Shown: in pieces, positions 1-63,443 of the stretch | How positions within the stretch are numbered: position 1 is the stretch's first letter | Layout: the number at the start of each line of letters is the position of its first letter | Assembly (NCBI RefSeq): GCF_006345805.1 | Contig: NC_043000.1 | Span: forward strand, 127,038,001 to 127,102,000 | Source: Octopus sinensis | Lineage: Eukaryota | Direction of reading: 5' to 3' | DNA: 64,000 bases | Notes under the pieces: model-generated | The model's database searches: none | Told to the model about the DNA's origin: nothing | The model's input: the letters and a program-made list of their open reading frames with translations, nothing else | Position numbers and translations under genes: made by a program

Positions 1-28
1 ATATAGGAAATAAGATGAGATTACTTAC

Positions 29-239
29 TTTGATATCGTTCACCCGTTTGTTGGCGTCACTGACCAGATAGGAAATATTGTTATCTTGACTAGAAATATG
101 ATTGGACATTTCTTTGAGCCAGGCCAATATTCCGTCGACTTGGTTTTTGAATTCTTGAATCGACTGATCATTGGTACTAGTGGCAAATAGCTGCTTATTG
201 GCTCTTGTGACCAATTCATCACACTTTTTCTCTGCAGAT
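29..239 (-). CDS. Internal coding exon (211 nt, phase 2/0) of the spectrin-repeat gene: (R)SAEKKCDELVTRANKQLFATSTNDQSIQEFKNQVDGILAWLKEMSNHISSQDNNISYLVSDANKRVNDIK
   Basis: Acceptor ctcttgttatctAG at 241-240 and donor GTAAGT at 28-23. The helix-A signature F...ILAWLKE is typical of spectrin repeats. The track ORF 40..222 is a different, wrong frame. The gene continues beyond the window start. Confidence 0.9.
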
Positions 240-429
240 CTAGATAACAAGAGATTTTTTTGAATTATATTTTCAGCAAACTGATTGCAGTCAATTTGGT
301 TGGATGGCTTGAAGATAAAATGCTAGCTTAGGATGTTTTATAGTGTATTGCATGGTTCAGTGAATTATAGTTCTGAATTGTGTAACGGTTAATTGTGAAT
401 GAGTTTAATCTGTCCAGTATCAATAAGAT

Positions 430-1848: not shown

Positions 1849-1967
1849 CTGACTTTGTCATCCACCAGTTGTACATCATGGCTGCTGAGTGTTTTAGTGA
1901 TAGTTTCCTGTTTAGATTTAATTTGTTTCAGCTTGTTGCTGCTTGACTCAAGTTTATGTGATAGTTT
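1849..1967 (-). CDS. Internal coding exon (119 nt, phase 0/2) of the spectrin-repeat gene: KLSHKLESSSNKLKQIKSKQETITKTLSSHDVQLVDDKV(R)
   Basis: Acceptor tattttctttaactttgcAG at 1969-1968 and donor AG|GTGAGT at 1848. Open frame with phases matching both neighbours. Not in the ORF track. Confidence 0.88.
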
Positions 1968-11680: not shown

Positions 11681-13824
11681 GATATACATGAGCGACACAC
11701 AAATACTGAAAGGTGAAAGGTGTACATATAGCTGCAGGTATGGCTGTGTAGTTAAGAAGCTTGCTTTGCAATCACAAGATTTTGGGTTCAGTTCCACGTG
11801 ACAGCACCTTGGGCTAGTATCTTCTACTATAACCCCTGTCCAACCAATTCCTTCTGACTGTGCAAGTGAATTCATTCAACAGATGGAAACTGTAAGGAAG
11901 CCTTGGCATGTAAAAGGTATGAAGCACATTGGGTGAAATGGTTGGCGCTAGGAAGGGCATCCAGTCATAGAAAGCAAACCAAATTAGACTGGAACCTGGT
12001 ACAGTTCTCTGGCTTGCTAGCTCTGGTCAAACTATCTAACCCATGCCAGCATGGAAAATGGATATTAAAGGATGATGATGGTGATGATGATGAAGATGAT
12101 GATGATGGACATACACACACGTGTGTGTGTGTCTTTATGTTTGTTGCCTCCACAACCAGTGTTGGATTGCTTATTTCACTGTAACTTAGAGGTTCAGCTA
12201 AAGGGACTGATAGAATAAGTACCAGAGTCAATCTGTTCAACTAAACCCTTCAAGGTAATGCCCCAGCATGGGCACAATCTGATGATTTAAAAAAGTAAAA
12301 GATATTCAAAAATTTAACAGTGATGTTGTTGTTTAACCCCAGGCCAACTCAGATTTAACAGATCTAAGATCAAAGTCTGCTAAGCTGTGAATATCTCATC
12401 TTTATATTTTCCTTTCCAAGCATCATACAAATATGTCCTACATTTTCTAAGATGGTACAGCATGATCTAAGGAAAATTTGGCTACTATTTCTTGCAGGTT
12501 GCTAGCCCAGGAACTTTAACATTTATTATTTTTTTTCCAAAATCTGAGATCTTGTGTATTTATATAGACACTCAATGTCTCAGATTAAAAAAGAAATGAG
12601 ATTATGAGATGTTCATGCCTTTTCTTGCAGGAATAACTGCATGGTTAAGAAGTTCACTTCCCAGCTAAATAGCTTTGAGCTCAGTTTCACAGTGTGGCAC
12701 CATGACCAAGTGTCTTCTGGCCCTTGTGAGTGAATTTAGTAGATGGAAACTGAAAGAAGCCCATCATATGCATGTATGTATTTGTGTGTGTTCTTTGGGT
12801 TCTTTCTTGTCTTGACACTGTGTGATGTTGTAAACAAGGGTCACCTTAATACAAGTGGGGGTCGTTCATTTCTAGTCTTTCATGAAAACAAAATCAGCCA
12901 AGGGGAAATATTAACAAAATCACCACCACCATAAGGAAGCCTCCAAGTGGTCATTCAACCTGCTAGAAGAAGCAATCAAATTTCCTTCATGTCAACACCC
13001 CAGCATCTTAACGAAGAATATATTGGATCAAATAGTTTTGGATTCCATGCATATAAAAAAAAATTGGATGGATGGTTGGTCATGACTGGAAAGCCTTTGG
13101 CTAAATGCATGCTCGATCAAGGTTGACTTGGAGCAAAACAACACAATGACTGGGGTTGTTTAATTCAGACACAACCGGTGGTGGTAGTGATGGCGACGGC
13201 AGTGTCCACCACCACCACCACCATCTCACTGATGATCCAATACAACCATCATTTCAAACCACAACATCACATCAATGACTGAAGCTAATTGATCACACAC
13301 ACACACACACACACACATATGCACATGGATTATTTGTTTCTTTTTATGTCCATATCTCCATGCAGGTATGGGTTAGATGAATATATTGTTGAGGCATCAT
13401 TTTGCTGATAACCATTAATTTACACCAGCCCTGGGGGCCTTTCTGAATGGCATGTCAAACAAATTATGTTTTATGTAGTGTGGACTGCCTGATGATGAGC
13501 CATGCCTCATGTGGCCCCCTTCTTGGAAATGGTTGCTCATGCTTGGTTTATATCAATGAAGAATTTGTTGTGATTTATTATTCCATCAGTGTAAAAACAG
13601 GGAGTTGAGATATGTTACAAACACTCTGAACAACAATGACATTCAGAATGGTGTGTTATTGAGAGGTCTTTTATAAACTGATATGGAAGAAAGAGAGAAA
13701 AGAGAAAGGAAAAAAGAAAGTGGAGCAGAGAGAGAGAGAGAGAGAGAATGAATTGAGATAGAAAAAGGAAGACTTAGAATTCAGTGTTATTGAGATACCT
13801 TTTAAAAGGTGACAAAGGAGAGAA

Positions 13825-13873
<49 letters not shown>

Positions 13874-15575
13874 AGGGAGGGAGAGAGGGAGAGAGAGAGA
13901 GGATAGGCAGATTTTATGGGTAGTGAAGATGTGAGACAAAGTGACCTTTGCTATGCCTTATTAGATTTTCTTGGAATGTTACCAGTACTTTGAACAGATA
14001 ATGACTGATGGTATGTTGATCACAGTTTCATTGTTGTTGTTGTTACTATTACTGTCATTTATTATTGTTGTTGCTGTTGCTACTATTATTGTTATTAATT
14101 TGAAACGATTGAAACAAATTTAAATGTATTGATGTAGTTACAATTTATGGATCAATTTTTGTCACAACATAACATATCAGTAAAATGAACTTGTGCTCCT
14201 CATTATTAATGTTATTTAAACACGCACGAATCATTTGTATGGTTTTACAACCATTTTCCCATGCCAGCATGAGTTGGATGAATATATTACAGAAGCATTG
14301 TTTTACAGTTGGATGCCCTTCCTATCACTAATCTTTAACTGTTTTTTTATTTTTTTTAGGTAAGAATTTCACATGTCTCTAAAGGCAAAAAGCCAGAGGA
14401 TAATTAGTTGACAGAAGTGACAACAGCTTTGATAATTGACTTTCATAGAGCACAGACACACAGACACACACACACATTTTCATCATTTGTTGAACACACT
14501 CATACATTTTCATCAAGTTGAACCATTACTTCATACACATTAATTCCTACACAAATATACATATATTCATTTTCATCATGTAGAAGCATTAAACCCTACA
14601 TGTTTTTTCTCCGCTTTTTTTTCATTCACTCCATTTTTTTCCCTCTTAATCCTTTCTGCTGAAGAGCATAGGCTCAAAACATCAAAGACTTTTCCATTCC
14701 TCCTGAGCATCAAACTATAATACACCTGCTCATTGTTCCATCACCTGTCTTTGCTTTTTGTTTTCTGTAAATTTGAACTACATATATGCATACATACATG
14801 CATACATATATAAATATGTTTATAGGTGCAGGCATGGCTTTGTGGTAAGAAATTTGCTTCACAACCAAATGGATACAGGTTCAGTCACAGTATGTGGCAC
14901 ATTGGGTAAGTGTCTTCTAATATAACATCTTCCACAATTTATTGTATTGTATCATCCACAGGTGCTGCATGGAAATCAATAGAACCCATGTGGAAGTGTT
15001 CTGATGTTTCTATTAAAACTTTATGAGTTTGCCAATAGACTCTGCTAAGTTCTCTTTACTTTTCAGTTTTTTTCTGAATTTTTCAAATTGCAACTCTAAT
15101 TTACAGCAGATACCCTGTGTACGTATATGTGGATATATATCTTTCTCGTTTATCTTTTATTTGTTTCAGTCATTACATCGTGGCCATGCTGGGGCACTGC
15201 TTTGAGGAACTTTAGTCAAAACGAATCAACCCCAGTACTTGGGTTGCTTTTTAAGCCTGATACTTATTCATGTAATAGCTGGAAGGAAAGAGGGATGCAC
15301 AAGCACTAGGCTGGTTCTCATACTCAGTAAAACTGACTGAAGTAACTTGCTCAAGGATACAATGAGCTGCCTGGCTCAGGAACTGAACACACAACCTTCT
15401 GATTATGAGCCCAATACCTTAACCACTAAACTATCTATCTTCTCTCTCTCTCTCGCACACACACATACACACACACACACACAAACACAAACAGACTGAG
15501 AAAGAGAAATGTAATTATTCACCACATGATTACATTAATGATGTTATAATTAATATACACTAATATCCCACTTAC

Positions 15576-15671
15576 TTTCCTCTTCAGTCTCCTCTTCTTC
15601 GGGGGTTGCCCAGAGGCATATCCATAGCGTGGGTGTTTCCTCTTACCTGTACAACTCTGCACAATCCCCAT
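15576..15671 (-). CDS. Candidate alternative first coding exon: MGIVQSCTGKRKHPRYGYASGQPPKKRRLKRK (32 aa, phase-0 donor)
   Basis: ATG at 15671 with an in-frame TAA 9 nt upstream; 96 nt open; donor AAA|GTAAGT at 15575. In frame with the next exon's phase-0 acceptor at 1968. A GC-richer unique island among repeats. A second strong donor (ACAG|GTAAGA at 15646) is phase 1 and would be out of frame. Confidence 0.7.
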
Positions 15672-15814
15672 CAAGATTTACGAAGGTGGCCAGAATGTGA
15701 CAAATAAATTAATGAACAATAACTTAACGACCTTTTAACAACATCGTTCTCTAATACCGGCTTCCTCCTCTCACTACTCCCCACCACACTTTTCTCCTTC
15801 TCTAACACATTCAT
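15671..15814 (-). other. Putative 47-codon upstream ORF whose TGA overlaps the main ATG (TGATG)
   Basis: ATG at 15814 and stop at 15673-15671 sharing a base with the ATG of the MGIVQS exon. It matters only if the transcript starts upstream of 15814. Confidence 0.3.
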
Positions 15815-15876: not shown

Positions 15877-15910
<34 letters not shown>

Positions 15911-16770
15911 TACATACACTTCAGAGTAGATATACATTGTTAGAAAGTTATATACAAGTGTTGACATCAACATTGATGACCCACCTTCAGTTCTGAACTT
16001 TTGGAAAGATAGTAAATAGACTTTGGTCATTTAAATAAAACAAAAACAAAACTGCCACCACCACCACCACCACAATACAATCACTGCGTCGGTGGGCAAG
16101 TCTCTACGTAGAGTTCAGCATATTAGAAACAGCAGTCAAATCTAGCTTAAACCACAATCTAAGTGTTAAGAAAAGAAGGATACATAGAATAATGTAATCT
16201 GATAAAAGTATAGGGATAATCAAGGCTGGAATGACATTTGATCAGAGATCTGCTTGCTCATGGTTGACTTGGGGTTACACAACAACAAGAACGACAGTAT
16301 ACAATGCAATGAATGAGAGAACTTCAATATGGTTTCTTGATCTGCTAGAAACAGCAGGTGAGTCTTTAAAATTACAATCTACAGTCTTTAAAAACTAGGA
16401 GATACTAAGTAATGCTGTCTGGAATAACAGTTAAATCCCCTTCAAATCATATTCTATCACCTTAAAAACAGGAAGGATAATTTGAATAATGTAGATACCC
16501 CTAAAAACACAGGCTGGTCATGTTCTTTTTATTTTGTTATCTACACCGACAGGTGTGAAAATGCACCCAAAATCCCTTGAGACTCATTTCAACCCAAGGA
16601 CATCCAGATTTGTTGTGACACACTTGTTTTATAATTCTTGTCTCTCATCAACATTATAACAAAACAACTAAACTTCCTTCTTCCTGGTTCTTTTCTACAC
16701 AGCTTTAAATCTTTAAAGATTGCATGGAGCTATTTTATGGTTTCCTACTTCCTTTTTCTATTCCTCATGC

Positions 16771-17450: not shown

Positions 17451-20400
17451 GCAGGGGGGGGGCCATCTTCAAGTATGGGCACTCTAGGCAGTCCTTTGTA
17501 TGTTGTGGTTTACCATCAATAAATAAACACTATAGGACCTAATGCATTGATTTACCCAGGGGCCCGCAATGCTGCTAAGGAACTTCTGTGCCTATACCCA
17601 ATGGGTTTCTTTGAGTTTCTGTCAACCACATCTATTCACAAAATTTTGTCATTCCAGAGCCATTGTAAAAGACACTTGTCTAAGGTGACTTGTAGTGGGA
17701 TTGAACCTGAAACTACATGATTGGGAAATGAGCTTCTTAACTACACAGCCATGCCTGCATCTAATACATAATTATTAATACAAAAAGAAGGAAATGGTTT
17801 TGTAAGAGGCAATCTAAAGTAGTCCAGCTTTTACTAACCTGCCTTCTTTTTCAGGTATTGTAAATCTAAGACTACATGATTCAATGTGCTTTTTTTTACC
17901 TTTTGAATAAGGGGTGCAATTTGTGGAAGATTTTGCTTCTATATTCTAGCAGGTTAAGTAATCACATACAGGCTCCTTTGCTGGTTTGTGAAGATGATGC
18001 CAGCTTGAACAGAGTAGATATATGATGAAAGTCATTCCAGTTGTGACCATCCCTTGAATTTGTACATGTAAAACTGAAATTGTATAATGTCCTTCCTCAT
18101 TTTAAGACAGTAGAGTTTGGTGTTAAAATTTGGCAGCTATTTCTAGCAGACAGAGCAACCATGCAAAGGTTCCTTTGATAGAGGTATTTAATATCATAAT
18201 GACACTTGGTGAAAAGATATTTGCATATATAGATATACTAATATCTTTATCTGTCTGCCTTCCTCTCTCTTTACACACAGACTCACATGCATACACACAA
18301 GCACAAGCACACACGTAACACACCTGTCGTTTATAATGGTTTATTGGTTAGCTATGTCATCCACAGTTGAATGGTCAGTGATAAGCTGAATAATGTGCAA
18401 TAAAAATAATTGAATGAAACCGCTGTTGCTTTCAGTGATGAGCTGTTCAGTCTTTCCATCAATTGAACGACCTACTCTTTAAATTAATATACATGAAGTG
18501 GCTGAGTATTCCACAGGCACACCATATATCCCTAATGTAATTCTCGGGGAGAATTTAACATGACAGTGGTTGATGTTAGGAAGGGCATCCAGCTGTAGAA
18601 ACACTGTCAGATCAGACTGGGGCCTGGTGCAGCCTCCTGGCTTCCCAGACCCCGGTCGAACTGTCCAACCCATGCTAGGATGGAAAACGGATGTTAAACG
18701 ATGATGATGATACCATGTGACAAAACTGGACCTTTAGATAATATATATAACTTATTCAATGGGATTTCAATAGTTCCTGTCCACTTAATTTTATTCACAA
18801 GGTTTAGGTCAACGTGGGACCATAGTATAAGATGCATGTCCAAGATCCTTTGCAGTGGGATCGAACTTGAGGCTTCATGATAGCAAAGCAAATGTCTTAA
18901 CCATTTGGCCATACTAAGTCCAGAGTAGGATGGTTATGTACAATAAAAGTACCTGTTGGACTCTTGTAAGTGCCAGATGAGAATTTACTAACTTGGTAAC
19001 TCAAGATCTGACTGAGCTTCCAGGTTGCTAAACAACCCACACAGACGATTTGTTAACCAATCGGGCTCTGTGGTCAATGTAATCAACTGGCCCTTCTTCC
19101 AAAATTGCTGGTCTGGTGCCAAAAATTTGAAAACATTATTCTTTTTATTATTATTATCATTATTATTATTAAAGCAGTGAGCTGGCTGAATCGTTATCAT
19201 GCCAGGTGAAATGCTTAGTGGTATTTTGTCTGCCACTATGTTCTGAGTTCAAATTCTTCCCAGATCGACTTTGCTTTACATCCTTTCAGAGTTGATAGAT
19301 TAAATACCAGTTGTGTACTGGGGCTGATGTAATCAACTAGTCCCCTCCCACCAAATTTGAGGCTTTGTTTATAGGGATCAAATGTTTGTGCAGTATGTTA
19401 GCTCACTCCTTCCATCAAATTGACACGAACTGTAAAAGTGCACAATGTGCCACAAATCACATGTTGAAGTGATTGCAGACCAAATTGAGAATATTAGGCT
19501 TGGTTTACCAACTGTAACAGTTAATACCCTAATTATCCCATTCATGGGATCCAGCAGGAAATATTAAATGTATGTTTTAAGATGTGATATAAACCAGTGA
19601 ATTATCCTTTACACTTTAAATAAATATCATCATAACTTTCACCACCACCATCAACATGTATGTTTTAACATTCATAACTGCATGCTGGGATGGGTTAGCT
19701 AAGAGGACCATCTTAACAGTGTTACAGATCTCTGAGCAAAGCAATACATTGGGACCTATAGTATTTATTTCTTGACAGCATTCATAGATTAGCATTGGGC
19801 TCCTAGGGACTGATTGCTCAGTGTGCCCATGCTTTAAGATGGCACTGTTTGCCAGGTTTTTCATAGAACACACTGCTTGTGGGCTATGTCCTTTTTTTTT
19901 TATTGATTTCAAATTGCACCGAGGTCAATTTTACATTTCATACTACTTGGATTGATAAAATGAAGTACCAGCCTAGATTGGTGGATTGGCAGAATCATTA
20001 GGGCATCAGAAGGAATACTTTATTGTAACTGTTCCACCTGTTTGATTTCTGAGTTCAAATCTTACCATAGCTCATTTTGGTGATGAATTTATTTTGCCAT
20101 CTGGACTCCTTCACTAAATGCAAGAATTTGGATTGGATCAGGTCTTTGATTTGAGGATACTTTTCCTCCCTCCCACCATTCTCAGAGGCTCTAGCTTCCC
20201 AACCACAAGGTTCTGGGTTCAGTCTCACTGTGTGGCATCTTTGGCAAGTGCTTTCACTTGTGAGTGGATTTGGTAGACGGAAACAGAAAGAAGCCAGTCA
20301 TACATGTGTTTGTGTGTATGTATTTGTCCTGCATCACTGCCGGACAACCGTGTTGGTTTGTTTACATCCCCATAACGTATCGATCTTAAAAAAGTATTGG

Positions 20401-22311
20401 GGGTCGATTTGTTTGACTAAAAACTCTTCAAGGCAGTGCTCCAGCATGGCCAGAGTCTAATGACTGAAATGAATGAAATAAAAGAAAGTAAAAGAAAAAT
20501 ACTGGTATCAGATATAATCCTTTCTTCCCAACTGCACAGACACCTACATTTGGTAGCACCCTTATCCATACCACACTGAACAGCCATTCCTATCACATGT
20601 CCCTAGCAGTGCAAGCTTTTGTCCAGCACCTTTCAACTGATGCCTGACTAGCTGTTTGGTTAACCCTTTGATATCAACCCACCTGAAACCACCCTGGCTC
20701 TCTAGTACAAATGATTTGTTTTCAAAATTTCTGAATTAAAATCTTCCACCAAACCTTAGTCACAATTTGTGTTCCTCATGATAACTAAATTATTATTTTA
20801 TTAAATTCTTTGTTATACTCTTTACTTTTTTACTCTTTTACTTGTTTCAGTCATTTAACTGTGGCCATGCTGGAGCACCGCCTTTAGTCAGCAAATTGAC
20901 CCCAGGACTTATTTTTGGAAGCTTAGTACTTATTCTATCGGTCTCTTTTACCAAACTGCTAAGTTACGAGGACGTAAACACACCAGCATTGGTTGTCAAG
21001 TGATGTTAGGGGGACAAACACAGACACACAAATATATATACACACACATACACATATATATACATATATACGACAGGCTTCTTTCAGTTTCCGTCTATCA
21101 AATCCACTCACAAGGCTTTGGTCGGCCTGAGGCTATAGTAGAAGACACTTGCCCACGGTGCCAGGCAGTGGGACTGAACCCGGAACCATGTGGTTCGTCA
21201 GCAAGCTACTTACTACACAGCCACTCCCAATTGAAAAAAACACAGAGTATCTCAACAGAAATATGGAAACAAAAGGGTTACATTACTTTTGTTGATTCTG
21301 TGTTTCAGAGATGCAATTACATTCTGTACCGTGGATGCTGAAACATCTTGTTAACACCCATTGTTTGCACTGTGAACACAGCAAGAAGTTTATGCTTACT
21401 TTATTCTTACATTCAGATCAAGACTTCGTCATAAAAGATTGCACTGAGATTTCACACTTTTATCAGTTATTTCTTGTGCTTCTGGCACGGTGAGCTTTAA
21501 TTCTATGAAATGTAAACCAATTCTTTGAAATTTCTATCATTTTCTATGACAGTGACAGTTTCTGCTATGGAAACTAAATCATTGGAATATGAAATTTATC
21601 ACAGAAACAAGATATGGACTTTTATGTTGTCGCAAAAGAAACTCAAACAACACACTCTGTAGGAATTGAACAAATCCAGGCATAGGAGTGGCTGTGTGGT
21701 TAAGGTGCTTGCTTCTCAGCCATGTGGTCTTGGGTTCAATCCCACTGTGCAGTACTTTGGGCAAGTGTCTTCTACTATAACCCCAGGCTGACCAATGCCT
21801 TGTGAGTGAATTGGGTAGATAGAAATTGAAAGACGTCTGTAACATATATATTTTAAGACCCCCTTCAGTCATGAATGACCATAGGATTGCACCTAGGAAG
21901 TTACCTTCTGAGGCACAAGTCCAAGCAAGATTGTTTTATGGAGGACCAGCAGTCGCCCATGTATACCAGCCTCCCCTCTCCATGTCATCAATGTTATCCA
22001 AGGGAAAGGTAAAGGTTGATACAGCTTGGTACTAGTGACATCGCAACTCGTTTCTACAGCTGAGTCAAATGGAGCAATGTGAAATAAAGTGTCTTGCTCA
22101 AGGATTCAACACACAGCCTTGTCTAGGAATCAGACTCACTACCTCATGATTGTGAGCCCGACGCTCTAATCACTGAGCCATGCACCTTCACTAACATATG
22201 TGTGTGTGTGTGTGTGTGTGTATAGATAGATATAAAAACATATATATACACACACACACACAGAGTTTCGTACATATACACACACACACACTCACATATA
22301 TACACACACAC

Positions 22312-22390: not shown

Positions 22391-23110
22391 GAGTGCGTGA
22401 CTAAATTGCTGTCTAAATTACGCAAAAATGAAAATAACACGGACATCTCATTTTAATAGATATATTTACCAAAGTTACATAAAAATATCCTGAAATACTA
22501 AAGAGTAAATTTATTCAATAAAATCGTCATTGGATACAACCACGCCCTCCAAATGACTTCGGAATCTCCGGCGACTTTTCTGGATGCTCTCCTTCTTTAA
22601 GTTGGTGAACACTGCTATAATCTTTGCCTTCAATACATCTTTGGTGCTACAAGTTCTGTCGGTCTCTCGCTCAACTGCACCTCACACATAATAATCAAAG
22701 GGGTTGCAGTGTGGGGGGGTTAGGTGGCCAGATGTTAGGGGGTGATGTGGTCGCAGAAATTATCTGACAGCCATGACTGGGTTCTCCTGCCTGTGTGGCA
22801 TGGTGCAGAGTCCTGTTGCCACACATAGAGTCTTCCAACAGCCAGCCTCTTGACCCAGGGCAGCACTACCTCCTCTAGGCACTTGATGTAGGCCTCTGTG
22901 TTGAGTCTGAGACCATGTGGAAAGACGAATGGAGGCATAATGCCACCATCACTATTGATCGCTCCAAACACCATGATGTTGATTGGATGTTTGATTTTTA
23001 TCACTCCCGGTACATGTCCTCAGATTGATACTCAAACATGATGAAATGTTCACATTGGAGCTTCCGGCACGAATACCAAGCAGTACAGCACAATGTTTTC
23101 AAATTTCTGA
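22390..23110 (-). mobile_element. Decayed Tc1/mariner-superfamily transposon, DD37D (maT-type), C-terminal half
   Basis: MVFGAINSDG...YVWQQDSAPCH...HITP/NIWPPNPPHCNPFDYY. There are 37 residues between the second and third Asp across a frameshift. Ends approximate. Confidence 0.85.
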
Positions 23111-35790: not shown

Positions 35791-36192
35791 GGATGTCAAC
35801 TTAATGTTAAATTTCAAGGAATATAAAGGGACATAACCAAACGAACATTTAAACAATAATAAATGACTATATATATGCACATATATATACATATATATAT
35901 GCACATTATATATATATATATATATATATATATGAAGTTTAAAAAAAATTAGGATGCAAAAGAAATCGATTTGAACAGGTGTGAAAAGGTGCAGATAAAT
36001 TTCCAAATGTATCAATGTTTAAACTGAAACTAATTTTTGTTACTGAAAGAATACTGTTCTTGAAGTTGAAGCAATATAAAGTTCTTTTATACTGATTACA
36101 TTTTCTTGTCAAGTGTTTGTTTTAATTGCTACATTATATTTTATGCTCTAACATTACAATGTAGTGTTCTATTAGTTATTATGCTATAATAT

Positions 36193-36198
36193 TTTATT
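36193..36198 (-). terminator. Candidate polyadenylation signal AATAAA for the terminal exon
   Basis: Plus-strand TTTATT at 36193-36198, about 30 nt past the stop; ATTAAA also at 36126-36121. The region is very AT-rich, so chance occurrence is possible. Confidence 0.45.
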
Positions 36199-36227
36199 AT
36201 GGTATAATGTAATATCGTAATATAATT

Positions 36228-38081
36228 TTACTTCAGGATTTCTTCTTTAAGTGTTTGTTTCATTTTTTCAGCAATTTTTTTAAGTTGCCGAGATTTTCTA
36301 GTCACTTTCTCAATAGCCTCATCAAGGTGGTACCTGTCCATTACAAGAGATCGTTGATCACGTCTTCGAGAAGAAAATTCATGCTGATGTCTTGGGTGAC
36401 GAGCTGCAAGGTCTAAATCATCATATGAATGCCTGAATGACCTTCTGGATTGTCTTTGAGGAAAGCCATGTGGTGTATATGAAACCTGTTCGCTTTGGTT
36501 TGGTAGGAACTGGTGAGCGGAGGAATTAGCAGAGGAAACATAAGGATTTGAGATATAAGGTGGTGGATTTGTAGGTGGTATTAGGTTCTGAGACTGAGTG
36601 GAATTTCGGGAAATGAATTGTGGTAAATTATTTGAAAAGCCAGAATCAGTCATTGGTTCAGAAGCAACATTTCTATTAATGGATGCTGTTGGACGGTGCA
36701 TGTTTGAAAATCCAAAAGTGGTACCATTCTGCTGCTGCTGATTAGAATGGAATCTTCGTAAATGTGGCTCAGGAAGTTGGTAGCTGCGCAGTCTTTCAAT
36801 ACGTTGACTGATATTGTTTAAATCTTGTTGAGTAACCTTCTTTCTTGAAAATACTGGCCTTGAATTTTGTGTTACAGAATTGAAAGGCGTTTGTGGTCTT
36901 TGAGGAATCAAATACATTGGTTTAGGTGGCACAAAATTAGTGTTATTTCTATACTGTGGTGAGACAAAATTTGCATTACTTTGATTACCATCTGCTTCAG
37001 AAGTCTGCGATGAGTTGCCAGGATGCTGTGCAGCGGTATTCAATTGAATCAGATGAGGAGATGAAACTTCATCATTCTGTTTCGATTCTGGTGATAAAAG
37101 ACTGTTATTTGATACAAGTTTCACATCATTCAGAATATCTTTAAGTTTTTCATGTCTAACGAAATTGACAGAGTTATCCTCACTAAAAGAAGTTTGAGTT
37201 CCTTGGTCAGTATATGTTTGGGTACTTGCATCACAAGTAAAATCTGATTGCTTAATAACACGGACATCTTTCAGGATTTCCTTAAGCATGGTACCATTTA
37301 GAGTTGAAGAAGGAGAATAAACACTGTCAGATATTGTTGAGTTTTGGTCGATTCCTTTGTCTGTTTTTAGGCTTTTTACTTCAAACAGTATGTTTCTTAA
37401 CATATCGCTTTTTGAGCCACTCAGAGATTTTGTTTGTGCCGAAATAGAATGTAAGGAAGTACTAGAGGTTTGCATTGCTCTGCTACGTAACAGTCTTGTC
37501 TGGGTTTGGCCATCGTTAATGGGTAGACTTCTGTTTAAAGAACTAAAAGAGTGAGCAAAAGATTCATTCATTCCGAAATTTTTTGGAGTCTGTGTTCTAG
37601 CATTGCAATGAGTCTGAGAGCTGGTACTCCTCATCCAGCCATCAGTAGATTCATTGATATGATTACTCATAAATGAGATACTGTCTTCAGAATGGCTACT
37701 GTACAAAGTTCTGGTGGAATGAAAACCATCAAAATCAGCATCATTATCTAGAGTAACATCAAAACTAGATGCTTGCATGGTGTTTGTTTCCCCATACCCA
37801 GACTCTTCACTTTCGGATTCAAGCAGCACATTTCTACACTTTAATGATGAATGTGGGCTGAATGTATCTAAACCATACCTCCGTTTTGAGTGTTCACTAT
37901 CTCTTGATGAAGATGGTCTTTGCTGGTAATCAGTGAAGGAAGCACCATTCGCAGAGGGAAATTTTGATGCAAATGGATCAGTATCAGAATCGTCTTCTGA
38001 GTCAGAGGTGAGCCGAGCCCTTCTACCAGGATAGCGGGCAGATGGTTCTGAAGTTTGAGTGGAGTCACACCGCTTGGTTGG
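36228..38081 (-). CDS. Large terminal coding exon (617 aa plus stop), probably an alternative last exon of the spectrin-repeat gene; Ser/Gln/Asn-rich disordered tail with multiple TQT motifs and a C-terminal coiled-coil-like helix
   Basis: The 533-aa track ORF (37829-36228) stays open 84 more codons upstream (PTKRCDSTQTSEPSARYPG...SLKCRN) to a pyrimidine-rich acceptor ...cactctatctaccctccacAG|CCA at 38082. This acceptor is phase 0, matching the 63140 donor. In-frame stops lie just upstream of about 38130. TAA stop at 36230-36228, with AATAAA about 30 nt later. Confidence 0.8.
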   Translation of the reverse strand, partial: PTKRCDSTQTSEPSARYPGRRARLTSDSEDDSDTDPFASKFPSANGASFTDYQQRPSSSRDSEHSKRRYGLDTFSPHSSLKCRNVLLESESEESGYGETNTMQASSFDVTLDNDADFDGFHSTRTLYSSHSEDSISFMSNHINESTDGWMRSTSSQTHCNARTQTPKNFGMNESFAHSFSSLNRSLPINDGQTQTRLLRSRAMQTSSTSLHSISAQTKSLSGSKSDMLRNILFEVKSLKTDKGIDQNSTISDSVYSPSSTLNGTMLKEILKDVRVIKQSDFTCDASTQTYTDQGTQTSFSEDNSVNFVRHEKLKDILNDVKLVSNNSLLSPESKQNDEVSSPHLIQLNTAAQHPGNSSQTSEADGNQSNANFVSPQYRNNTNFVPPKPMYLIPQRPQTPFNSVTQNSRPVFSRKKVTQQDLNNISQRIERLRSYQLPEPHLRRFHSNQQQQNGTTFGFSNMHRPTASINRNVASEPMTDSGFSNNLPQFISRNSTQSQNLIPPTNPPPYISNPYVSSANSSAHQFLPNQSEQVSYTPHGFPQRQSRRSFRHSYDDLDLAARHPRHQHEFSSRRRDQRSLVMDRYHLDEAIEKVTRKSRQLKKIAEKMKQTLKEEILK

Positions 38082-40689
38082 CTGTGGAGGGTAGATAGAG
38101 TGATGAAGTAATAACCATTGGACTCTGAATTTTACTTACTCTATATACAGGACAGAACATGAATCTACTGATATCAACTCAGCTGTGACTATTTCATAAC
38201 AATAACACTAACTCAGGTTTTAGACTGCATCACATAATTATGAAGATTTAAAATACATTTGGTGAATATAGTTTAAAGATTTTTACAGTGTGAACATAGA
38301 AATAAAAAAAAAATGTCATTTTAACTATCAGTCTTATCATGAAGGTTAGTTTTTGTTTTGGCTGAAAAAAAATTTGAAATCTGTTGTTTAAAGAGAATTA
38401 TTAGATTAAATATATAATTGGAGTCAGACAACATTTAGCACCTCTACTAAAAATTAGAAAATTATACAAATTTTATTCCTGCTTTCACTTCTACCAACAT
38501 CTTATTTATCATTATTTTCTTTACATCATCATTGTCATCATCATCATCATCATTGCCACTATTATCATCATCACCAAATATTATCTTCCTGCTCACCCCC
38601 AACAACCCCTATTTTCAACAGTGAAAGAACTGTTGAACAAAAGTGCGTTAAGGTAGCTGCTGCACCACAAACCCCACCATCACCTCATCACAAGCATCGT
38701 TACAATTGTCATTATTATCAAAATTAGCATTATTATCAAAAGTAGGAGCGAAGAATATTGAAAAACAACATAATCACTAGAATCATCATCATTATCATGA
38801 ACAAAACCATTACAACCATTATCATCTTCAACTCTAATAGTTATGTACTGGGGCACAATGCAGTCCTCTGACAGTGAATTCTACCAAATCATCTAAGCTA
38901 TGTTAGCATAGAAGACAGATATTAAATGATGATAATGATAGCTATATCTATATATATATACATACATATGTATACATATATATACAAATACACATATATA
39001 TCTGTGTGTATGTGTTTGTCTATCGGTTGTTTATATTCCAACATTTTACCATGACATTAATTTTCTGCCTAATTTTAAATCACGTTCACAATTTTTTTTT
39101 TTGTTTTCGTGTGCTATTTTAATTACCATTTTCCCAATAGAGCTTCTTGATGAAGGCAACAGCCATTCCCTCTGTCCCTTGTTCCCAATTATATTTCATC
39201 AAAATTGATAGGAACTGTATTCCTGTGTTCTATCTACTTTTCACAAGAATTGCACTTCATTGATCAATAATTAAAATATTATATCTAGTTTATAGTAGTT
39301 ACCAACTCAATAAATTGCTAGAAGATTGGGCAAAGAGACAATAGCTCAAATTCTCTTATTAGCACAATATTCTATGCTTTGAAAAAATAAATAAAAATAT
39401 CCATTTAGGGACCAAATTTGTTAACTTGCACAGTTCAGCTAGAATTCACAAATAATCTACACTTATTTTGTCTACTATTACAACAAGGGTATCTGCTATT
39501 GAGGAGTTACAAACTTTATAAGGTGGCGAGCTGCCAGAAATGTTAGTACGCCAGGCGAAATGCTTAGTGGTATTTCGTCTGCTGCTACATTCTGAGTTCA
39601 AATTCCGCCAAGGTTGACTTTGCCTTTCATCCTTTCAGGGTCGATTAAATGAGTACCAGTTACACACTAGGGTCGATATAATCGACTAAATCTGTTTGTC
39701 CTTGTTTGTCCCCTCTGTGTGTAGCCCCTTGTGGGCAGTAAAGAAATAACAAACTTTATACCACCCAATGAATATACTTCTGTTTCTTTTATCAGCCCTA
39801 CAGGTCCTGCAGTAACCATTTTACCATAACTTTCCTGGTTGTTAGTAGAGTCTCATGGCAACAGATCTAAGAGTGTCATTATAATGTGAAAGGCCAGAGA
39901 TCTAGCAGACTACAAAGTGCACAATGTCTCACAATGATAACAGATAATTTCTTCACAGAGTTTAAAGAAGTTCTGCTTTTATTGCCAATATAGATGCAAT
40001 ATTTAGTTGGCATTTGTTTTTTAATGATCTGGTCTAGAGGAAAGAGCAATCAATGCCTATAACCTTTACAAGAGATGAGAGACAGATGAAGCTCAAAGCT
40101 AGAGAGTTCTCAAGTTAAATATGGCCAAATGTTTTGATGATATGAAGGGTAACAACACTGCTTTCACTTAAGCTATGGAAGTTAAAAAAACCAACAATGT
40201 GTGTGTGACACAGCAGAATAAATCTCCAGAAGAAATAACTAGTGAGGAAGGAACATTGAAGATGGCAGTTATTTAAAACCATTCCCAATGTTATTCAGGA
40301 AGAGCACACTGTTATGTGTTTTGAAAAGTAGAACCATATTCCTGTAGAGAGTGAAAGACTGAAGAGTTTGGTGAAAATAAAAGCAATCACTGGAGCAATG
40401 TAGCAGAAACTGAATGTAAAACTATTAACGCAATGGTTCCAAACATTTCACAAAAGAATTAACTACATTAATTGTTGCTAAAATACAATGATTTAGATTA
40501 TGGTTCTAGACCATTGATCATAAAATTAATGTATTATAAAGCTTTCATTTTAATAGGTGATTTTTGTTGCTGAAACATAGAATACACAATTGGCATCAGT
40601 TACAAGCTGTCAGGATATCATATCTGTCAAAAACACCATGTTCCCCACAATCAAGTAACACTAATTCTCTTGACCTATCATTTGTAAAT

Positions 40690-41340
40690 ATAAAGTCAAT
40701 TATCAGGCACTTTCTGTTCTCTTTATTTACTACTACCAAATCAGGCCTTCTAGCTTCTATTACTCTGTCAGTCTGAATATTTAAAGTTCCACAACATCTT
40801 GTACTTCTTATTTTCCGTACTTCACTAGGTTCATGCTCTAACCATTTATCAGTATGTTCAAACCCTAGCTTTCCCAGTGAATTGCTTTCCCTAGATTGTC
40901 ATGTCTTTTCTTGTATTCTTTCTATGCCAGCATGCTACATTCACTTACTATATGAGGAATGCTTTCTTCTTTTGATTTTCATAATCTACATTGGGAATCT
41001 ACTTGGTTTTTTCTATTTTGGCTTTTATCCTATTAGTCCTTAATGCTTGATCTTATGCAGCTCCTAACAAACTTTCTGTCTCCCTCTTCATGGGAATCTA
41101 CTTGGCTTTTATCCAATCAGTCCTTAATGTTTGGCAGCTACTGACAAACTTTCTGTCTCCTTCTTCAGCTTTTCCTTTCTGCAGCCATAACCATGTCTCA
41201 CTACTACTATTTGCTGAAACTGTCTTTGGGAATCTACCATGCAACGCTTTCTTCTGCCAGTCAGATAATTTCTGTTCTTTTTTCCAGTTTTTAAGTTCAT
41301 TTGGTGCTTTGGTTTCCCTGTCTTGCTGTGACTCTAGTAG
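40690..41340 (-). mobile_element. Decayed non-LTR retrotransposon fragment with CCHC knuckle and restriction-like endonuclease (R2/R4 group, R4/Dong-like)
   Basis: Broken translation DWQKKALHGRF...TWLWLQKG/KLKKETESL...HIVSEC...RHDNLGKAIHWE...IQTDRVIEARRPDLVVVNKENRKCLIID. Contains an internal ~80-100-bp tandem duplication at about 40990-41170. Confidence 0.8.
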
Positions 41341-42635
41341 CTTTTAATAAACTTCATATAAAGCTTATAATAATTTTTATTAAAAGATTTATTAAAAATT
41401 ATTATTATTATTATTGATATTATTATAATTTTATCATTATCATTATTACTTTTCCAAGTCTATATCATATCTTTTCTTTAGTTCTCAAATCATCCAAAGA
41501 ACAAGGGTTTGGAAGTCTGAAATTGTTGGGTTTGAGAAGTAGAGAGACAATTTGAAAGACAGAAAATGCAATCAACATAATTCATAAACGAAATTTTGAT
41601 AAGAGTCAAACTATCTGCATTGTGACTCTCACTAAAGAACAAATATGAAAACAAAAACAACAAAAAACTAGTCTGCAGAATATTGGTGATGTTTTGTGTC
41701 AGCAAAAAAGTCATAAAGTTCAAGAGTTTGGATGAGTTCATTCAGGAAGGGGAAAAAAAGAAAAAGAAGAAGAAGAAAGTTAGATTTTCCTCTCAGATGA
41801 AGGATCAGAACATTAATATCACATTCCTCTTCTAACCATGATATACTAGCTTATGCAAAGTCACGAACTTCATTAGTTAAAGAACAGACACTCATCTTAA
41901 TTTGCATTCAGAAAGTCAACATAAAAAACGGTAAATGGGTGTAAAAATATGCAAAAAACAACAAAATATTGCTTAAACAATTTACATGAAAGTACTATAT
42001 ATTTACATTACTATCCAGTTTATCCATGTTAAGTTGAAAAGTTGATGTAAAATCATGAAAGGTTTGCACGATTTAAGCCATTGTGGGTATAAAATGTCTA
42101 TGATAAAACATTTTCAGAACACATGAAAATAATCATCTAAAAATCTTATCTTTATTTTGATTAATTTTGCAATTTATTGATTTTTTTGTTTTTTATGTGA
42201 TTTTCGTTTCATTCATCTTTCAATTAGACACATTAATTATTCAACAGAATATTCTGTTTACAATTTTGTTTTGTATCAGGTTTCAAAAGACCAATAATAT
42301 TTGAATAATGCCAAATAATAGCTGAAGAACAAAACATAAAATAGGGAATAATGTAGAATAATATTTGAATAATATTGAAAGCTATTTAAATATAATAGAT
42401 TTTATTTAAATGCCTTCTGAAGAAGCAGCAGAGAAAGGAAGGAAAAAAGAAAAAAGGAAAGAGAGAGTATGTATACATGTGTGTATAAGAGTGTGTATGT
42501 GTGTGTTTTCTGAATATGCAAAGGGAACTAAGTAACAGAATTCACTAGACCAAATTATAATCAATTGTAGATAGAATTAAATTGCTCATTTGTAATCCCA
42601 GAAAGAAAGACAATATATAATGAGTGTTCAGTTAG

Positions 42636-52839: not shown

Positions 52840-53900
52840 CAGGCTAGTGATTTAACCTGCAGTGCCGTGAAAAGTTCAAAAGTGTAGTTTGTTCATCTAT
52901 GGTTGTGTGTGTGATGTGATGGATGAGGCTACATAAGTGACACTTATGTAACTAACACACATTGCAAACCAGCTGTCAACTAATGGAATAAACATCTCTT
53001 CTCTTACTTCTCTCATCTCATCTGGTCAATTTTTATATGTACTCTCCAGTAAGTTCAACAGACCATTGATTACAATCCTAGAATGTCTATGAGGTCAATT
53101 GCAAATTATCTCCATGTGTCAGAAGGAATAGTCAGAAATTATATCCACAAAGACGTCAGATATAAGACTTATTTGATGAGGAAAGGTCAATTTGTCAGAA
53201 AAAGCAAAAGAAAACACTACATCAGATCTAAAATGCTCTTAAATAAACTGAAAAATCCAGCAGGAAATTTGATTTGGTTTTTCTCAAATGAGAAAAACTT
53301 TGACCAAGATCAAAAAGTTAACAGAAGAAATGACAGATGGTTATGTGCAGACCCATCAGAAGTTTCAAGTGTTATGTATATAAAATTTCCTGCAACTGTC
53401 ATAGTTTTAGGGGTTATCAGCAATGAAGGACATGTGATGCTTCCTTTCTTCTTTCCCCAAGGCCTTAGAGTTAATCCTGCTGCCTACACTGAGGTTCTGG
53501 AAATAATTGTTAAGCCTTGAATAGACAGTGTATTCAATGGAAGGCCATATGTGTTTCAGTAAGACTCTGCACTATCACACATGCTTCTAGTAACACAGGA
53601 ATGGATGGCTGAAAATTTTCATGATCACATAACCCCTAACATTTGGCCTTCTAATTCCACAGATTTCAATCCATGTGGAGTGTTGTTGAGAGAGAAGCCA
53701 ATGAACATGCCCATTACACCAAAGGTTCTTTGAAAGCTTCCACAGTCAGAGTAATGTTCAAAATTAACCCAGACCACTTGATTTGAGAATGTAGATGATT
53801 TAGATGTCATATAGAAGCATTTGTTGAAGCTGAAGGTGGCTTTATTGAATAACATTATAGAAAAGGTTTATTTTATTTGATAAATAAAGTTATCTGTTAT
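52840..53900 (+). mobile_element. Decayed DD37D (maT-type) transposon
   Basis: WFFSNEKNFDQDQKVNRRNDRW...VIVLGVISNEGHVMLPFFFPQGLRVN...YVFQ*DSA...HITPNIWPSNSTDFNP, with stops and a deletion. Same family as 22390-23110 in the opposite orientation. Ends approximate. Confidence 0.85.
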
Positions 53901-56117: not shown

Positions 56118-56149
56118 AGTTGTTTCTGTTGAATGATCTAACTATACGT

Positions 56150-56296
56150 GCAAGAGTGGCTGTGTGGTAAGATGCTTGCTTACCAACCACATGGTTCCAG
56201 GCTCATTCTCACTGCATGGCACCTTGGGCAAGTGTCTTCTACTAAAGCTTTGTGAGTGGATTTGGTATAGACAGAAACTGAAAGAATCCCATCGTA

Positions 56297-56353
<57 letters not shown>

Positions 56354-56548
56354 GTATGTATATGTTTGTGTGTCTGTGTTTGTCCCCCCCAACATTGCTT
56401 GACAACCAATGGTGGTGTGTTTACGTACCCGTAACTTAGTAGTTCAGCAAAAGAGACCGATAGAATAAGTACTAGGGGTTGATTTGTCGACTAAAGGTGG
56501 TGCTCCTGCATGGCCGCAATCAAATGACTGAAACAAGTAAAAGAGTAA
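56150..56548 (+). mobile_element. SINE family A (tRNA-like head, ccttgggcaagtgtcttc core, internal TA/CA microsatellite, ...aaacaagtaaaagag tail), representative full copy
   Basis: Homologous copies at about 1157-1665 (-, partly duplicated), 11735-11900, 12630-12780, 14825-14920, 15140-15260, 17600-17760, 20200-20480, 20820-21227 (-), 21685-21840, 26020-26250 (-), 27060-27180, 27270-27660, 46500-46770, 52690-52835 and 62095-62220 (-). Confidence 0.8.
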
Positions 56549-56930: not shown

Positions 56931-57496
56931 TTGGGTTGTCCGGAAAGTTTGTGCCGATTTATAGTAGCTTACCTTTCGACTTATTTTAGAACATGGTTGA
57001 GTCCATTAAATAAGATTTGACTGCAACTCCATTTAGAGCACAGTTTAAGCTATCTTTTCGTGGAAGAAGGTTTATGTTCCTATAACCCGTGTTAATTTTG
57101 TAACCCTTTAAAATGGAAGATAAGAAAGGTCATTTTCGGCACTTGATGCTTTGGGAACCAGACAAAAATTGCTGCAGCTCAGCTGGGATATGTTACCCTA
57201 CCCTCCATATTCACCAGATATTGCTCCTTCGGATTTCCACTTTTTCAGATCTCTGCAGAATAGTCTTAATGGTAAAAATTTCAATTCCTTGGATGACGTA
57301 AAAAGATACCTTGATGAATTCTTTGCCATGAAACCCACTCAATTCTGGGAAGACGGTATTTTCAAGTTAAAGAAAAGATGGAGACGCATTGTGCAACAAA
57401 ATGGTTCATATTTGGTTGATTAAAAATGTAATGGCAAGTATTTATTGACCTTTTTCTTTCCTTTAAAAATCGGCACAAACTTTCCAGACAACCCAA
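56931..57496 (+). mobile_element. Internally deleted mariner (DD34D) element, 566 bp, with intact TIRs and TA target duplication
   Basis: TIR ttgggttgtccggaaagtttgtgccgattt and its near-perfect reverse complement, flanked by TA at 56929-56930 and 57497-57498. The N-terminus MEDKKGHFRHLML is joined directly to the C-terminal PPYSPDIAPSDFHFFRSLQN...GIFKLKKRWRRIVQQNGSY motif. Confidence 0.92.
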
Positions 57497-63140: not shown

Positions 63141-63443
63141 TGTAATTTTATCTTCAACAGCCTTTGGAGTTTCTTCCAATTCAATCCTTTCTAATTCTTG
63201 AGCATAATTAGCCAAGTCTCTATCAATTTCCATCTGATGTTCGAGGAAAGTTTTCCGGTCATGTTTCTCACATTCTTTAGCTTCTAAGACATTTCCAATG
63301 TGGCTCAAAATTTCTTCCCAGTCTTCTTGGATTGCTTGAATAATCGGGTCACTTAGTTGTGAGTTATGCTCAGTGAGCCGCCCATAGAGATGCTTCAAAT
63401 CATCAAGGGATTTCGATTTCTCTTCAACTTCACTCTTGAGAAT
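63141..63443 (-). CDS. Internal coding exon (303 nt, phase 0/0) of a giant spectrin-repeat protein (nesprin/spectraplakin-like): ILKSEVEEKSKSLDDLKHLYGRLTEHNSQLSDPIIQAIQEDWEEILSHIGNVLEAKECEKHDRKTFLEHQMEIDRDLANYAQELERIELEETPKAVEDKIT
   Basis: Acceptor ...aaacAG at 63445-63444 and donor GTAAGT at 63140-63135. 101 open codons of amphipathic helical, E/K/L-rich composition, with a Trp in a helix-C-like position (QEDWEEIL). Family assignment rests on the repeat pattern only. Confidence 0.9.

What the first reader, a model, noticed from the sequence alone, without database searches (positions are those of the whole stretch)
15576..15671. Hidden first exon encodes a Src-like membrane anchor (MGxxxS, adjacent Cys, polybasic)
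Seen: MGIVQSCTGKRKHPRYGYASGQPPKKRRLKRK has Gly2, Ser6, Cys7 and 11 K/R in the last 23 residues. It is too short for the ORF track. Established knowledge: MGxxxS is the N-myristoylation consensus, and a nearby Cys plus a basic cluster gives plasma-membrane targeting as in Src-family kinases. KRK...PPKKRR also fits a bipartite NLS. Inference: the C-terminal half of the protein would be tethered by lipid instead of by its normal N-terminus. If the gene ends in KASH, this would be a direct membrane-to-nuclear-envelope or inner-nuclear tether.
Basis: partly seen in the sequence, partly recalled or inferred. Interest (0 to 1): 0.75.

Follow-up and report, generated by a model that had tools for sequence, protein, structure and literature searches.

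The report
Unproven lipid-anchor mini-ORF in octopus nesprin
A 32-codon reading frame that looks like a lipid membrane anchor does sit inside a large intron of an octopus nesprin (Msp300/SYNE-like) gene and would splice in frame to the next exon, but nothing shows it is expressed or conserved, so it is most likely a chance ORF.

Summary
Window 15671..15576 (minus strand) reads MGIVQSCTGKRKHPRYGYASGQPPKKRRLKRK, ends at AAA|GTAAGT in phase 0, and joins in frame to the exon at 1967.

The host gene is an octopus nesprin. Exons at 63443..63141 and 38081..36231 match O. bimaculoides "muscle-specific protein 300 kDa isoform X10" at 97% and 94% identity. The second is a conserved alternative terminal exon. 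The mini-ORF lies in the 34 kb between it and the next spectrin-repeat exon.

The peptide meets the N-myristoylation pattern (PS00008) and a bipartite-NLS pattern. Its Cys is at position 7, not at 3, 5 or 6 as in Src-family kinases.

The combination is rare in this window (about 0.01 expected). It is also rare among real N-termini, so its rarity says little about whether this is an exon. The exon-like properties are common: 15 ATG ORFs with phase-0 donors lie in the same interval.

Other points against:
- The basic cluster is a purine tract read in one of three frames.
- An equally strong donor 71 nt upstream gives a 12-codon dead end.
- The Kozak -3 base is T.
- There is no CpG island.

No transcript, annotation or orthologue could be reached.

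Verdict: probably a chance ORF (about 0.7). A real alternative first exon is about 0.15. Human nesprin-1 already has a predicted myristoylated internal-start variant.

The parts
15576..15671 (-). The 32-codon ATG ORF (candidate exon E1'), MGIVQSCTGKRKHPRYGYASGQPPKKRRLKRK
   Evidence: Unique within the window.
15570..15575 (-). GTAAGT donor after the ORF (AAA|GTAAGT, phase 0, 8 of 9 consensus positions)
   Evidence: It has the same 9-mer as the real donor of exon D. There are only 13 GTAAGT sites on this strand in the 64 kb.
15641..15649 (-). Competing internal donor CAG|GTAAGA (exon would end at 15647, phase 1, also 8 of 9). Spliced to 1967 it gives MGIVQSCTETIT*
15576..15656 (-). Alternative reading as an in-frame 81-nt cassette (SCTGKRK...LKRK), entered through the AG at 15658-15657, phase 0 in and out
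   Evidence: The acceptor's pyrimidine fraction is 0.43, against 0.52-0.78 for exons A-D.
15576..15600 (-). Purine tract GAAGAAGAGGAGACTGAAGAGGAAA, which encodes KKRRLKRK in this frame and RRRGD* or EEEETEEE in the other two
   Evidence: The window has 15 comparable mixed purine tracts.
15678..15680 (-). In-frame TAA two codons upstream of the ATG. The Kozak context is cttgATGG, with T at -3
15456..15493 (.). (CA)n microsatellite flanking the unique segment on the 3' side (minus-strand sense)
15879..15919 (.). (CA)n microsatellite about 210 nt upstream of the ATG (minus-strand sense)
63141..63443 (-). Exon A, a spectrin-repeat exon of the nesprin/Msp300 gene, phase 0 in and out
   Evidence: 97% identical to residues 6131-6234 of XP_052822891.1; the homologue cluster includes SYNE1 of Acanthosepion pharaonis.
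36228..38081 (-). Exon B, an alternative terminal coding exon (KASH-less, Ser-rich C-terminus) with stop TAA at 36230-36228
   Evidence: 94% identical to residues 6233-6850 (the end) of isoform X10. All homologues stop at the same position. P0025 shows the A-to-B junction in another mollusc.
1849..1967 (-). Exon C, the proposed splice partner. Phase-0 acceptor ttgcag|AAA and phase-2 donor CAG|GTGAGT
29..239 (-). Exon D, a spectrin-repeat-like exon. Phase-2 acceptor and phase-0 donor AAA|GTAAGT
   Evidence: P0023 aligns to 241..20 at 48% identity; faint Pfam Spectrin hit; the F-x4-D-x4-WL repeat-start motif recurs in isoform X10.

Best explanation
The 96-nt ORF is most likely a fortuitous reading frame in non-coding DNA. 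It lies in the 34-kb interval between the alternative terminal exon (B) and the next spectrin-repeat exon (C) of an octopus nesprin (Msp300/SYNE-like) gene. An ATG-GGG happens to open a 52-codon stop-free stretch that runs through a purine-rich tract. That tract, in this one frame, spells KKRRLKRK. The stretch then meets one of the strand's 13 GTAAGT hexamers in phase 0. On this reading it is not transcribed as a first exon, makes no protein and has no function. Shown: the sequence features, the gene context and the frequency figures. Inferred: the absence of expression.
For: 1. The exon-like properties are common by chance. Fifteen ATG ORFs of at least 15 codons with a phase-0 donor lie in the same interval.
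2. The basic cluster is what a 25-nt purine tract gives in one of three frames. Fifteen comparable tracts are in the window.
3. An equally good donor (CAG|GTAAGA, 8 of 9) lies 71 nt upstream inside the ORF. Spliced to exon C it gives a 12-codon dead end.
4. The start context is weak (T at -3). Upstream ATGs open a 6-codon and a 46-codon uORF within 150 nt.
5. There is no CpG island. Local CpG o/e is only at the 88th-95th percentile from about 6 CpGs.
6. No protein, contig, metagenome stretch or paper holds the peptide.
7. The myristoyl-plus-polybasic combination is about as rare among real N-termini as among random ORFs. Its rarity therefore does not discriminate a real exon from chance. With a prior of about 10-20% for an internal first exon in such an interval, my posterior for a real exon is about 5-25% (inference).
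Against: - The joint motif is unusual for a 64-kb window: about 0.01 expected, and it is the only such ORF of 568.
- The ORF sits in a unique, non-repeat segment, not in a transposon.
- The donor is a perfect GTAAGT, identical to exon D's. The frame matches exon C exactly.
- Nesprin genes are known for many internal promoters whose first exons add short unique N-terminal peptides. Human p931KASH-Nesp1 was predicted to be N-myristoylated (PMC3388047; PMC3981789).
- All negative database results are weak, because octopus nesprin isoforms are hidden in the collection and no octopus transcript data could be queried.
Confidence: 0.72

Rival explanations
1. An internal promoter just upstream of 15671 drives a short nesprin isoform whose first exon encodes this peptide, spliced 15576>1967. 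Met1 is removed and Gly2 is N-myristoylated. Cys7 may be palmitoylated. The basic residues add electrostatic membrane affinity. The spectrin-repeat rod with its presumed C-terminal KASH would then be tethered to a membrane at its N-terminal end instead of to actin through the CH domains.
For: - PS00008 is satisfied (G2, I3, S6, C7).
- The donor is a perfect phase-0 donor and the join to exon C is in frame.
- The sequence is unique and not a repeat.
- The motif combination is rare by chance.
- The gene is a nesprin whose isoform X10 carries the N-terminal CH domain. The peptide would replace that N-terminus.
- There are precedents: internal-promoter nesprin isoforms, and a predicted N-myristoylation site on human p931KASH-Nesp1.
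Against: - No expression, annotation or conservation evidence was found.
- A competing upstream donor gives a dead-end product.
- The Kozak context is weak and uORFs are present.
- There is no promoter-like CpG signal.
- Cys7 is not at a Src-family position.
- The main basic block is 18 or more residues from Gly2 and looks like an NLS.
- KASH was not seen, because it lies outside the window.
Confidence: 0.13
2. The exon is real, but the peptide works mainly as a nuclear-localisation signal (bipartite RK-x12-KKRR), with or without myristoylation. It would send a short nesprin fragment to the nucleus or inner nuclear membrane rather than to the plasma membrane.
For: - The bipartite-like pattern RKHPRYGYASGQPPKKRR is present, together with PPKKRRLKRK.
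- Short nesprin variants with varied subcellular localisations are described (PMC3388047).
Against:
- The basic run is explained by a purine tract.
- No NLS predictor or assay was available.
Confidence: 0.04
3. The segment 15656..15576 is an in-frame 81-nt cassette exon between exon A and exon C. It would insert a 27-residue basic linker (SCTGKRK...LKRK) into the long isoform, without the Met-Gly.
For: - It is phase 0 in and phase 0 out, and is open.
- Nesprins have small cassette exons that encode unique peptides of 23 and 47 aa (PMC3388047).
Against: - The acceptor is poor: gatggggattgtgcag, pyrimidine fraction 0.43 against 0.52-0.78 for exons A-D.
- There are no homologues.
Confidence: 0.03

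Closest known systems
[quoted passage not shown]
   Same: - Both involve a giant CH-domain and spectrin-repeat gene with alternative 5' starts deep inside the gene. Those starts add a short unique N-terminal peptide to a common C-terminal part.
- Alternative 3' ends give KASH-less forms (PMC3388047, PMC3981789). Exon B here is such an alternative terminal exon.
- p931KASH-Nesp1 was even predicted to carry an N-myristoylation site.
   Different: - The human variants were found by RACE or PCR. Here there is no transcript evidence at all.
- The octopus peptide has no sequence similarity to anything retrieved.
Myristoyl-plus-basic membrane anchors (c-Src N-terminus, MARCKS, the 'myristoyl-electrostatic switch')
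   Same: - It starts Met-Gly with a small residue at position 6, followed by a strongly basic, acid-free segment.
   Different: - In Src and MARCKS the basic residues start right after position 6 (from memory). Here the first K is residue 10 and the main block is residues 25-32.
- Nothing shows that the peptide is made.
Dually acylated SH4 domains of Src-family kinases (Lck, Fyn, Lyn) and G-alpha-i/o N-termini
   Same: - It has the Met-Gly start plus a nearby cysteine that could be S-palmitoylated.
   Different: - The palmitoylated cysteines of those proteins are at positions 3, 5 or 6 (from memory). Here the only Cys is at position 7.
- No kinase or G-alpha domain follows it.
Classical bipartite nuclear-localisation signals (nucleoplasmin type)
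   Same: - Two basic residues, a 10-12 residue spacer and then a basic cluster: RK-x12-KKRR.
   Different: - This is a pattern match only.
- A myristoylated N-terminus and an NLS would pull in opposite directions unless they are regulated.
Drosophila Msp300, the namesake of the octopus annotation
   Same: - NCBI names the O. bimaculoides orthologue 'muscle-specific protein 300 kDa'.
- It has an N-terminal CH domain and a long spectrin-repeat rod.
   Different: - No comparison with the fly isoforms was run.
- The Ser-rich exon B terminus has homologues only among the mollusc-like sequences retrieved.

Membership tests
N-myristoylated proteins (NMT substrates; PROSITE PS00008 at the N-terminus) | Initiator Met followed by Gly2 | tested here: met
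   ATG GGG at 15671-15666
N-myristoylated proteins (NMT substrates; PROSITE PS00008 at the N-terminus) | Residue 3 not charged, aromatic or Pro; residue 6 small (Ser/Thr best); residue 7 not Pro | tested here: met
   Ile3, Ser6 and Cys7. The regex G-{EDRKHPFYW}-x(2)-[STAGCN]-{P} matches. From memory of Utsumi 2001, cited in PMC3388047: Ile at position 3 is permissive when Ser is at position 6.
N-myristoylated proteins (NMT substrates; PROSITE PS00008 at the N-terminus) | The Gly is the real N-terminus of a translated protein, and myristate is attached | not testable with these tools
   No transcript or protein evidence. It needs RNA and labelling experiments.
Src-family SH4 membrane anchor | Palmitoylatable Cys at position 3 (and/or 5, 6), or for Src itself basic residues directly after Ser6 | tested here: not met
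   The only Cys is at position 7. Residues 7-9 are C, T, G and the first basic residue is K10.
Src-family SH4 membrane anchor | Followed by unique, SH3, SH2 and kinase domains | tested here: not met
   It would be followed by spectrin-repeat exons C and D.
Alternative first exon of a nesprin gene | Lies inside a nesprin gene, on its strand, upstream of shared exons | tested here: met
   Exons A and B match XP_052822891.1 (Msp300 isoform X10) at 97% and 94%. The ORF lies between B and C on the same strand.
Alternative first exon of a nesprin gene | Usable splice donor in the phase of the next exon's acceptor | tested here: met
   AAA|GTAAGT in phase 0 against ttgcag|AAA in phase 0. An equally strong out-of-phase donor lies 71 nt upstream.
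Alternative first exon of a nesprin gene | Transcription start and junction reads, or an annotated isoform | not testable with these tools
   No octopus transcript data were reachable. Annotated isoforms are hidden under short cluster representatives.
Alternative first exon of a nesprin gene | Conservation of the ORF in other cephalopods | tested here: inconclusive
   No word-sharing protein. L001, a distant cephalopod, has no match within 10 kb of its exon B. L002, a sister octopus, covers only exon B.
Nesprin / KASH protein (the host gene) | N-terminal calponin-homology domain plus a long spectrin-repeat rod | tested here: met
   The P0035 N-terminus (...ERVQKKTFTNWMNTYL...) and 6,000 or more residues of repeats. 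It is named Msp300 / SYNE1 by its sources.
Nesprin / KASH protein (the host gene) | C-terminal KASH transmembrane domain downstream of exons C and D | not testable with these tools
   The window ends 28 nt after exon D. Isoform X10 ends in exon B without KASH, and longer isoforms could not be retrieved.
Bipartite NLS | Two basic residues, a 10-12 residue spacer, then at least 3 basic residues in 5 | tested here: met
   RK-HPRYGYASGQPP-KKRR. This is a pattern match only, with no functional test.

The most novel reading that the evidence does not exclude
An octopus nesprin makes, from an internal promoter, a short isoform whose N-terminus is a lipidated (myristoyl, possibly palmitoyl) polybasic anchor in place of the actin-binding CH domains. 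A spectrin-repeat rod would then bridge a cellular membrane directly to the nuclear envelope through KASH. This would be the first evidence-backed case of the idea that was raised only as an ELM prediction for human p931KASH-Nesp1.
Probability: 0.12. Interest if true: 0.6.

Novelty: not a real feature. Interest (0 to 1): 0.2.

Why it matters
If the exon were real, it would show that LINC-complex proteins can swap a cytoskeletal N-terminal anchor for a lipid one. That would give a direct membrane-to-nucleus tether, and it would put a testable face on a prediction made for human nesprin-1 in 2012.

As things stand, the value of the work is mostly negative and contextual:
- It identifies the locus as the octopus Msp300/nesprin gene.
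- It defines four exons and a conserved KASH-less alternative terminal exon.
- It shows that the striking peptide motif does not by itself argue that the ORF is an exon.

Tried and rejected
- **Peptide plus exon C against the 5.8-billion protein collection:** no word-sharing candidate.
- **Exons A+B+C+D concatenated:** only exon B found homologues.
- **Exhaustive HMMER search with A+C+D:** it returned single-exon genomic ORFs for A and one for D. None carries a spliced junction into C. P0029 and P0031, which seemed to span the junctions, are unrelated coiled-coil proteins.
- **Search for longer or shorter annotated isoforms using isoform X10:** 6850 aa was over the limit, 5000 aa timed out, and 1344 aa gave only a 22%-identical relative.
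- **Exact look-ups:** isoform X10, the 50-aa unspliced ORF and the exon B ORF are all not on record.
- **Orthologous loci:** L001 shows nothing within 10 kb. L002 covers only exon B and is genomic, not a transcript.
- **Degenerate DNA pattern against metagenome contigs:** 0 matches.
- **Literature search for the peptide string:** 0 papers.
- **Rfam and tRNA scans, in case the unique segment were an RNA gene:** nothing.
- **CpG island test:** marginal.
- **Repeat test:** the segment is unique, so a transposon origin is rejected.
- **Idea rejected:** exon B feeds the 1967 acceptor. B ends in a conserved stop, and its only GT would be phase 2.
- **BLASTP of C+D against isoform X10:** not significant (best E = 0.13). 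Only the repeat-start motif recurs.

Full report
**Observation**

The minus strand of window 15671..15576 translates to MGIVQSCTGKRKHPRYGYASGQPPKKRRLKRK, exactly as reported.

- It has Gly2, Ser6 and Cys7, 11 K/R in residues 10-32, no acidic residue, and a pI of 11.5.
- It ends at AAA|GTAAGT, a phase-0 donor.
- A TAA lies two codons upstream of the ATG, so in this frame it can only be a first exon or be entered from inside the ORF.
One is an internal CAG|GTAAGA donor (exon end 15647, phase 1). The other is an AG at 15658-15657.

**What the locus is**

The window is repeat-rich animal DNA with four convincing coding exons on the minus strand:

| Exon | Coordinates | Phase in / out |
|---|---|---|
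| A | 63443..63141 | 0 / 0 |
| B | 38081..36231, stop at 36230-36228 | 0 / terminal |
| C | 1967..1849 | 0 / 2 |
| D | 239..29 | 2 / 0 |

- Exon B has clear homologues, the best being Octopus bimaculoides A0A0L8I860 at 94% identity.
- Opening that cluster revealed XP_052822891.1, [quoted passage not shown], 6850 aa. Its residues 6131-6234 map to exon A at 97% and residues 6233-6850, its end, map to exon B at 94%. Its N-terminus carries the calponin-homology actin-binding motif.
- The exon A cluster contains a cuttlefish protein named SYNE1.
- The host gene is therefore the octopus nesprin orthologue. The window comes from a congener of O. bimaculoides, not from that species itself.
- Exon B is an alternative terminal exon. 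All its homologues, down to 31% identity, stop at the same ...KEEILK(Y) end. P0025 shows an A-like repeat spliced onto B-like sequence in another mollusc.
- Exons C and D continue the spectrin-repeat rod. The phases fit (A to C and C to D are in frame). D has a 48%-identical homologue in another cephalopod (P0023). The F-x4-D-x4-WL repeat-start motif recurs, although BLASTP against isoform X10 is not significant on its own.
- The candidate exon thus lies in the 34-kb interval between B and C, and its phase-0 donor fits C's phase-0 acceptor.

**Is the ORF more than chance?**

Two questions must be kept apart.

1. *The motif.* Of 133 ATG ORFs of at least 20 codons that reach a decent donor on either strand, only this one matches PS00008 and only this one has at least 11 K/R in 23 residues. 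Of 568 ATG ORFs of at least 32 codons, 3 match PS00008, 2 have the basic cluster and 1 has both. The expected joint count is about 0.01 per window, and less under a third-order Markov null. So the peptide is unusual for a 64-kb window, though not for a genome of gigabases.
2. *The exon.* What would make it an exon is the ATG, the open frame and a phase-0 donor. Those are cheap: 15 ORFs in the same interval have them, 2 with a donor matching at least 8 of 9 positions.

A myristoylation-plus-polybasic N-terminus is about as rare among real proteins as among random ORFs. Its rarity therefore hardly moves the odds between "real exon" and "chance". Starting from a prior of 10-20% that such an interval of a nesprin gene holds an internal first exon, I arrive at roughly 5-25% that this ORF is one (inference).

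**Sequence context**

- *Against:*
  - The main basic block is a 25-nt purine tract (GAAGAAGAGGAGACTGAAGAGGAAA). It reads KKRRLKRK in this frame and RRRGD* or EEEETEEE in the others. Fifteen similar tracts occur in the window.
  - The internal donor is as strong as the terminal one (8 of 9 each). Spliced to exon C it gives MGIVQSCTETIT*.
  - The start context is cttgATGG, with T at -3. Upstream ATGs open short uORFs.
  - CpG o/e upstream is only at the 88th-95th percentile, from about six CpGs.
- *For:*
  - The segment 15497..15830 is unique in the window, bracketed by two (CA)n arrays, and is not part of the dispersed SINE-like repeats nearby.
  - The donor 9-mer is identical to exon D's.
- *Other readings:*
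  - An 81-nt in-frame cassette (15656..15576) is formally possible, but its acceptor is poor (pyrimidine fraction 0.43 against 0.52-0.78).
  - No Rfam family or tRNA is present.

**External evidence**

None could be obtained either way.

- The peptide shares no words with any representative in the protein collection.
- The unspliced ORF is on no indexed contig.
- A degenerate DNA pattern finds nothing in metagenome contigs, and the string is in no paper.

These negatives are weak:

- The collection shows long NCBI isoforms only through short representatives. That is why exons A, C and D also appeared to be absent.
- The one sister-species contig found (L002, 89.6% identical) is genomic and covers only exon B.
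- The one distant cephalopod locus (L001) has nothing recognisable within 10 kb of its exon B.

**How it would work if real, and comparison with what is known**

The peptide satisfies the N-myristoylation pattern. With Ser6, Ile3 is permissive (from memory of Utsumi 2001). Calling it Src-like overstates the match:

- Src-family palmitoyl cysteines are at positions 3, 5 or 6, and Src's basic residues follow Ser6 directly. Here Cys is at position 7 and the first Lys is at position 10.
- The main basic block, at residues 25-32, fits a bipartite NLS (RK-x12-KKRR) at least as well.

The closest known systems are the internal-promoter short isoforms of vertebrate nesprins, which add short unique N-terminal peptides. 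Rajgor et al. 2012 noted a potential N-myristoylation site on the internally initiated p931KASH-Nesp1, as an unvalidated ELM prediction (PMC3388047; PMC3981789). The idea therefore has a precedent. A confirmed octopus case would be a new variant of a known kind, not a new category.

**Verdict**

| Reading | Probability |
|---|---|
| Chance ORF | about 0.7 |
| Real alternative first exon acting as a lipid/polybasic anchor | about 0.13 |
| Real exon acting mainly as an NLS | about 0.04 |
| In-frame cassette | about 0.03 |

- The exon hypothesis is untested and, on balance, unlikely.
- Overall interest is low. It would be moderate if junction reads or conservation turned up.
- No step had to be referred.

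Noticed in passing
window 36228..38081 (minus): Exon B is a conserved alternative terminal exon of the nesprin gene. It encodes a KASH-less, Ser-rich C-terminus of about 620 aa. The conserved blocks are ESESEESGYGET, LRNILFEVK, GTQTS, DLNxISxRxERLxxYQLP and DRYHLDEA...KMK. It belongs to no Pfam family. Homologues in other molluscs all end at the same position. Its function is unknown.
   Followed up: partly
window 57151..57423 (+); also 22735..23019 (-) and 53083..53520 (+): These look like mariner/Tc1 transposase remnants. The first matches the C-terminus of Mos1 and SETMAR transposase (E = 1e-21). The other two look like DDE-transposase fragments by eye, but Pfam gave no hit at E <= 0.01.
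   Followed up: partly
window 14810-14926 and 15124-15270, with copies at 12250-12304, 17666-17775, 20392-20488, 20814-20935, 21134-21223, 21689-21781, 27541-27658, 46663-46738, 56143-56244, 56467-56544 and 62078-62186: At least two families of short dispersed (SINE-like) repeats at 72-82% identity lie just downstream of the candidate exon and throughout the window. No intact tRNA gene and no Rfam family was found anywhere in the window.
   Followed up: partly
protein collection (method note): The 6850-aa NCBI isoform XP_052822891.1 is stored as a hidden member of a cluster whose displayed representative is a 621-aa fragment. Other members (P0036, P0037) match quite different parts of the long protein. 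Searches with exons A, C and D therefore return nothing although annotated octopus nesprins exist. Absence of hits for eukaryotic exons in this collection is not evidence of absence.
   Followed up: yes
L002 (Logan SRR11869391) against window 36054..38524: A contig from a sister Octopus species is collinear with exon B plus both flanks at 89.6% identity over 2.5 kb. Neutral divergence between available close species is therefore only about 10%, too little for a strong conservation test of a 96-nt ORF.
   Followed up: no
window 40599..40898 and 41101..41343 (minus): These stop-free stretches resemble retroelement (reverse-transcriptase-type) protein fragments by eye (for example ...DRVIEARRPDLVVVNKENRKCLIIDF...). 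They lie in the A-to-B intron. Pfam gave no hit for the first.
   Followed up: partly
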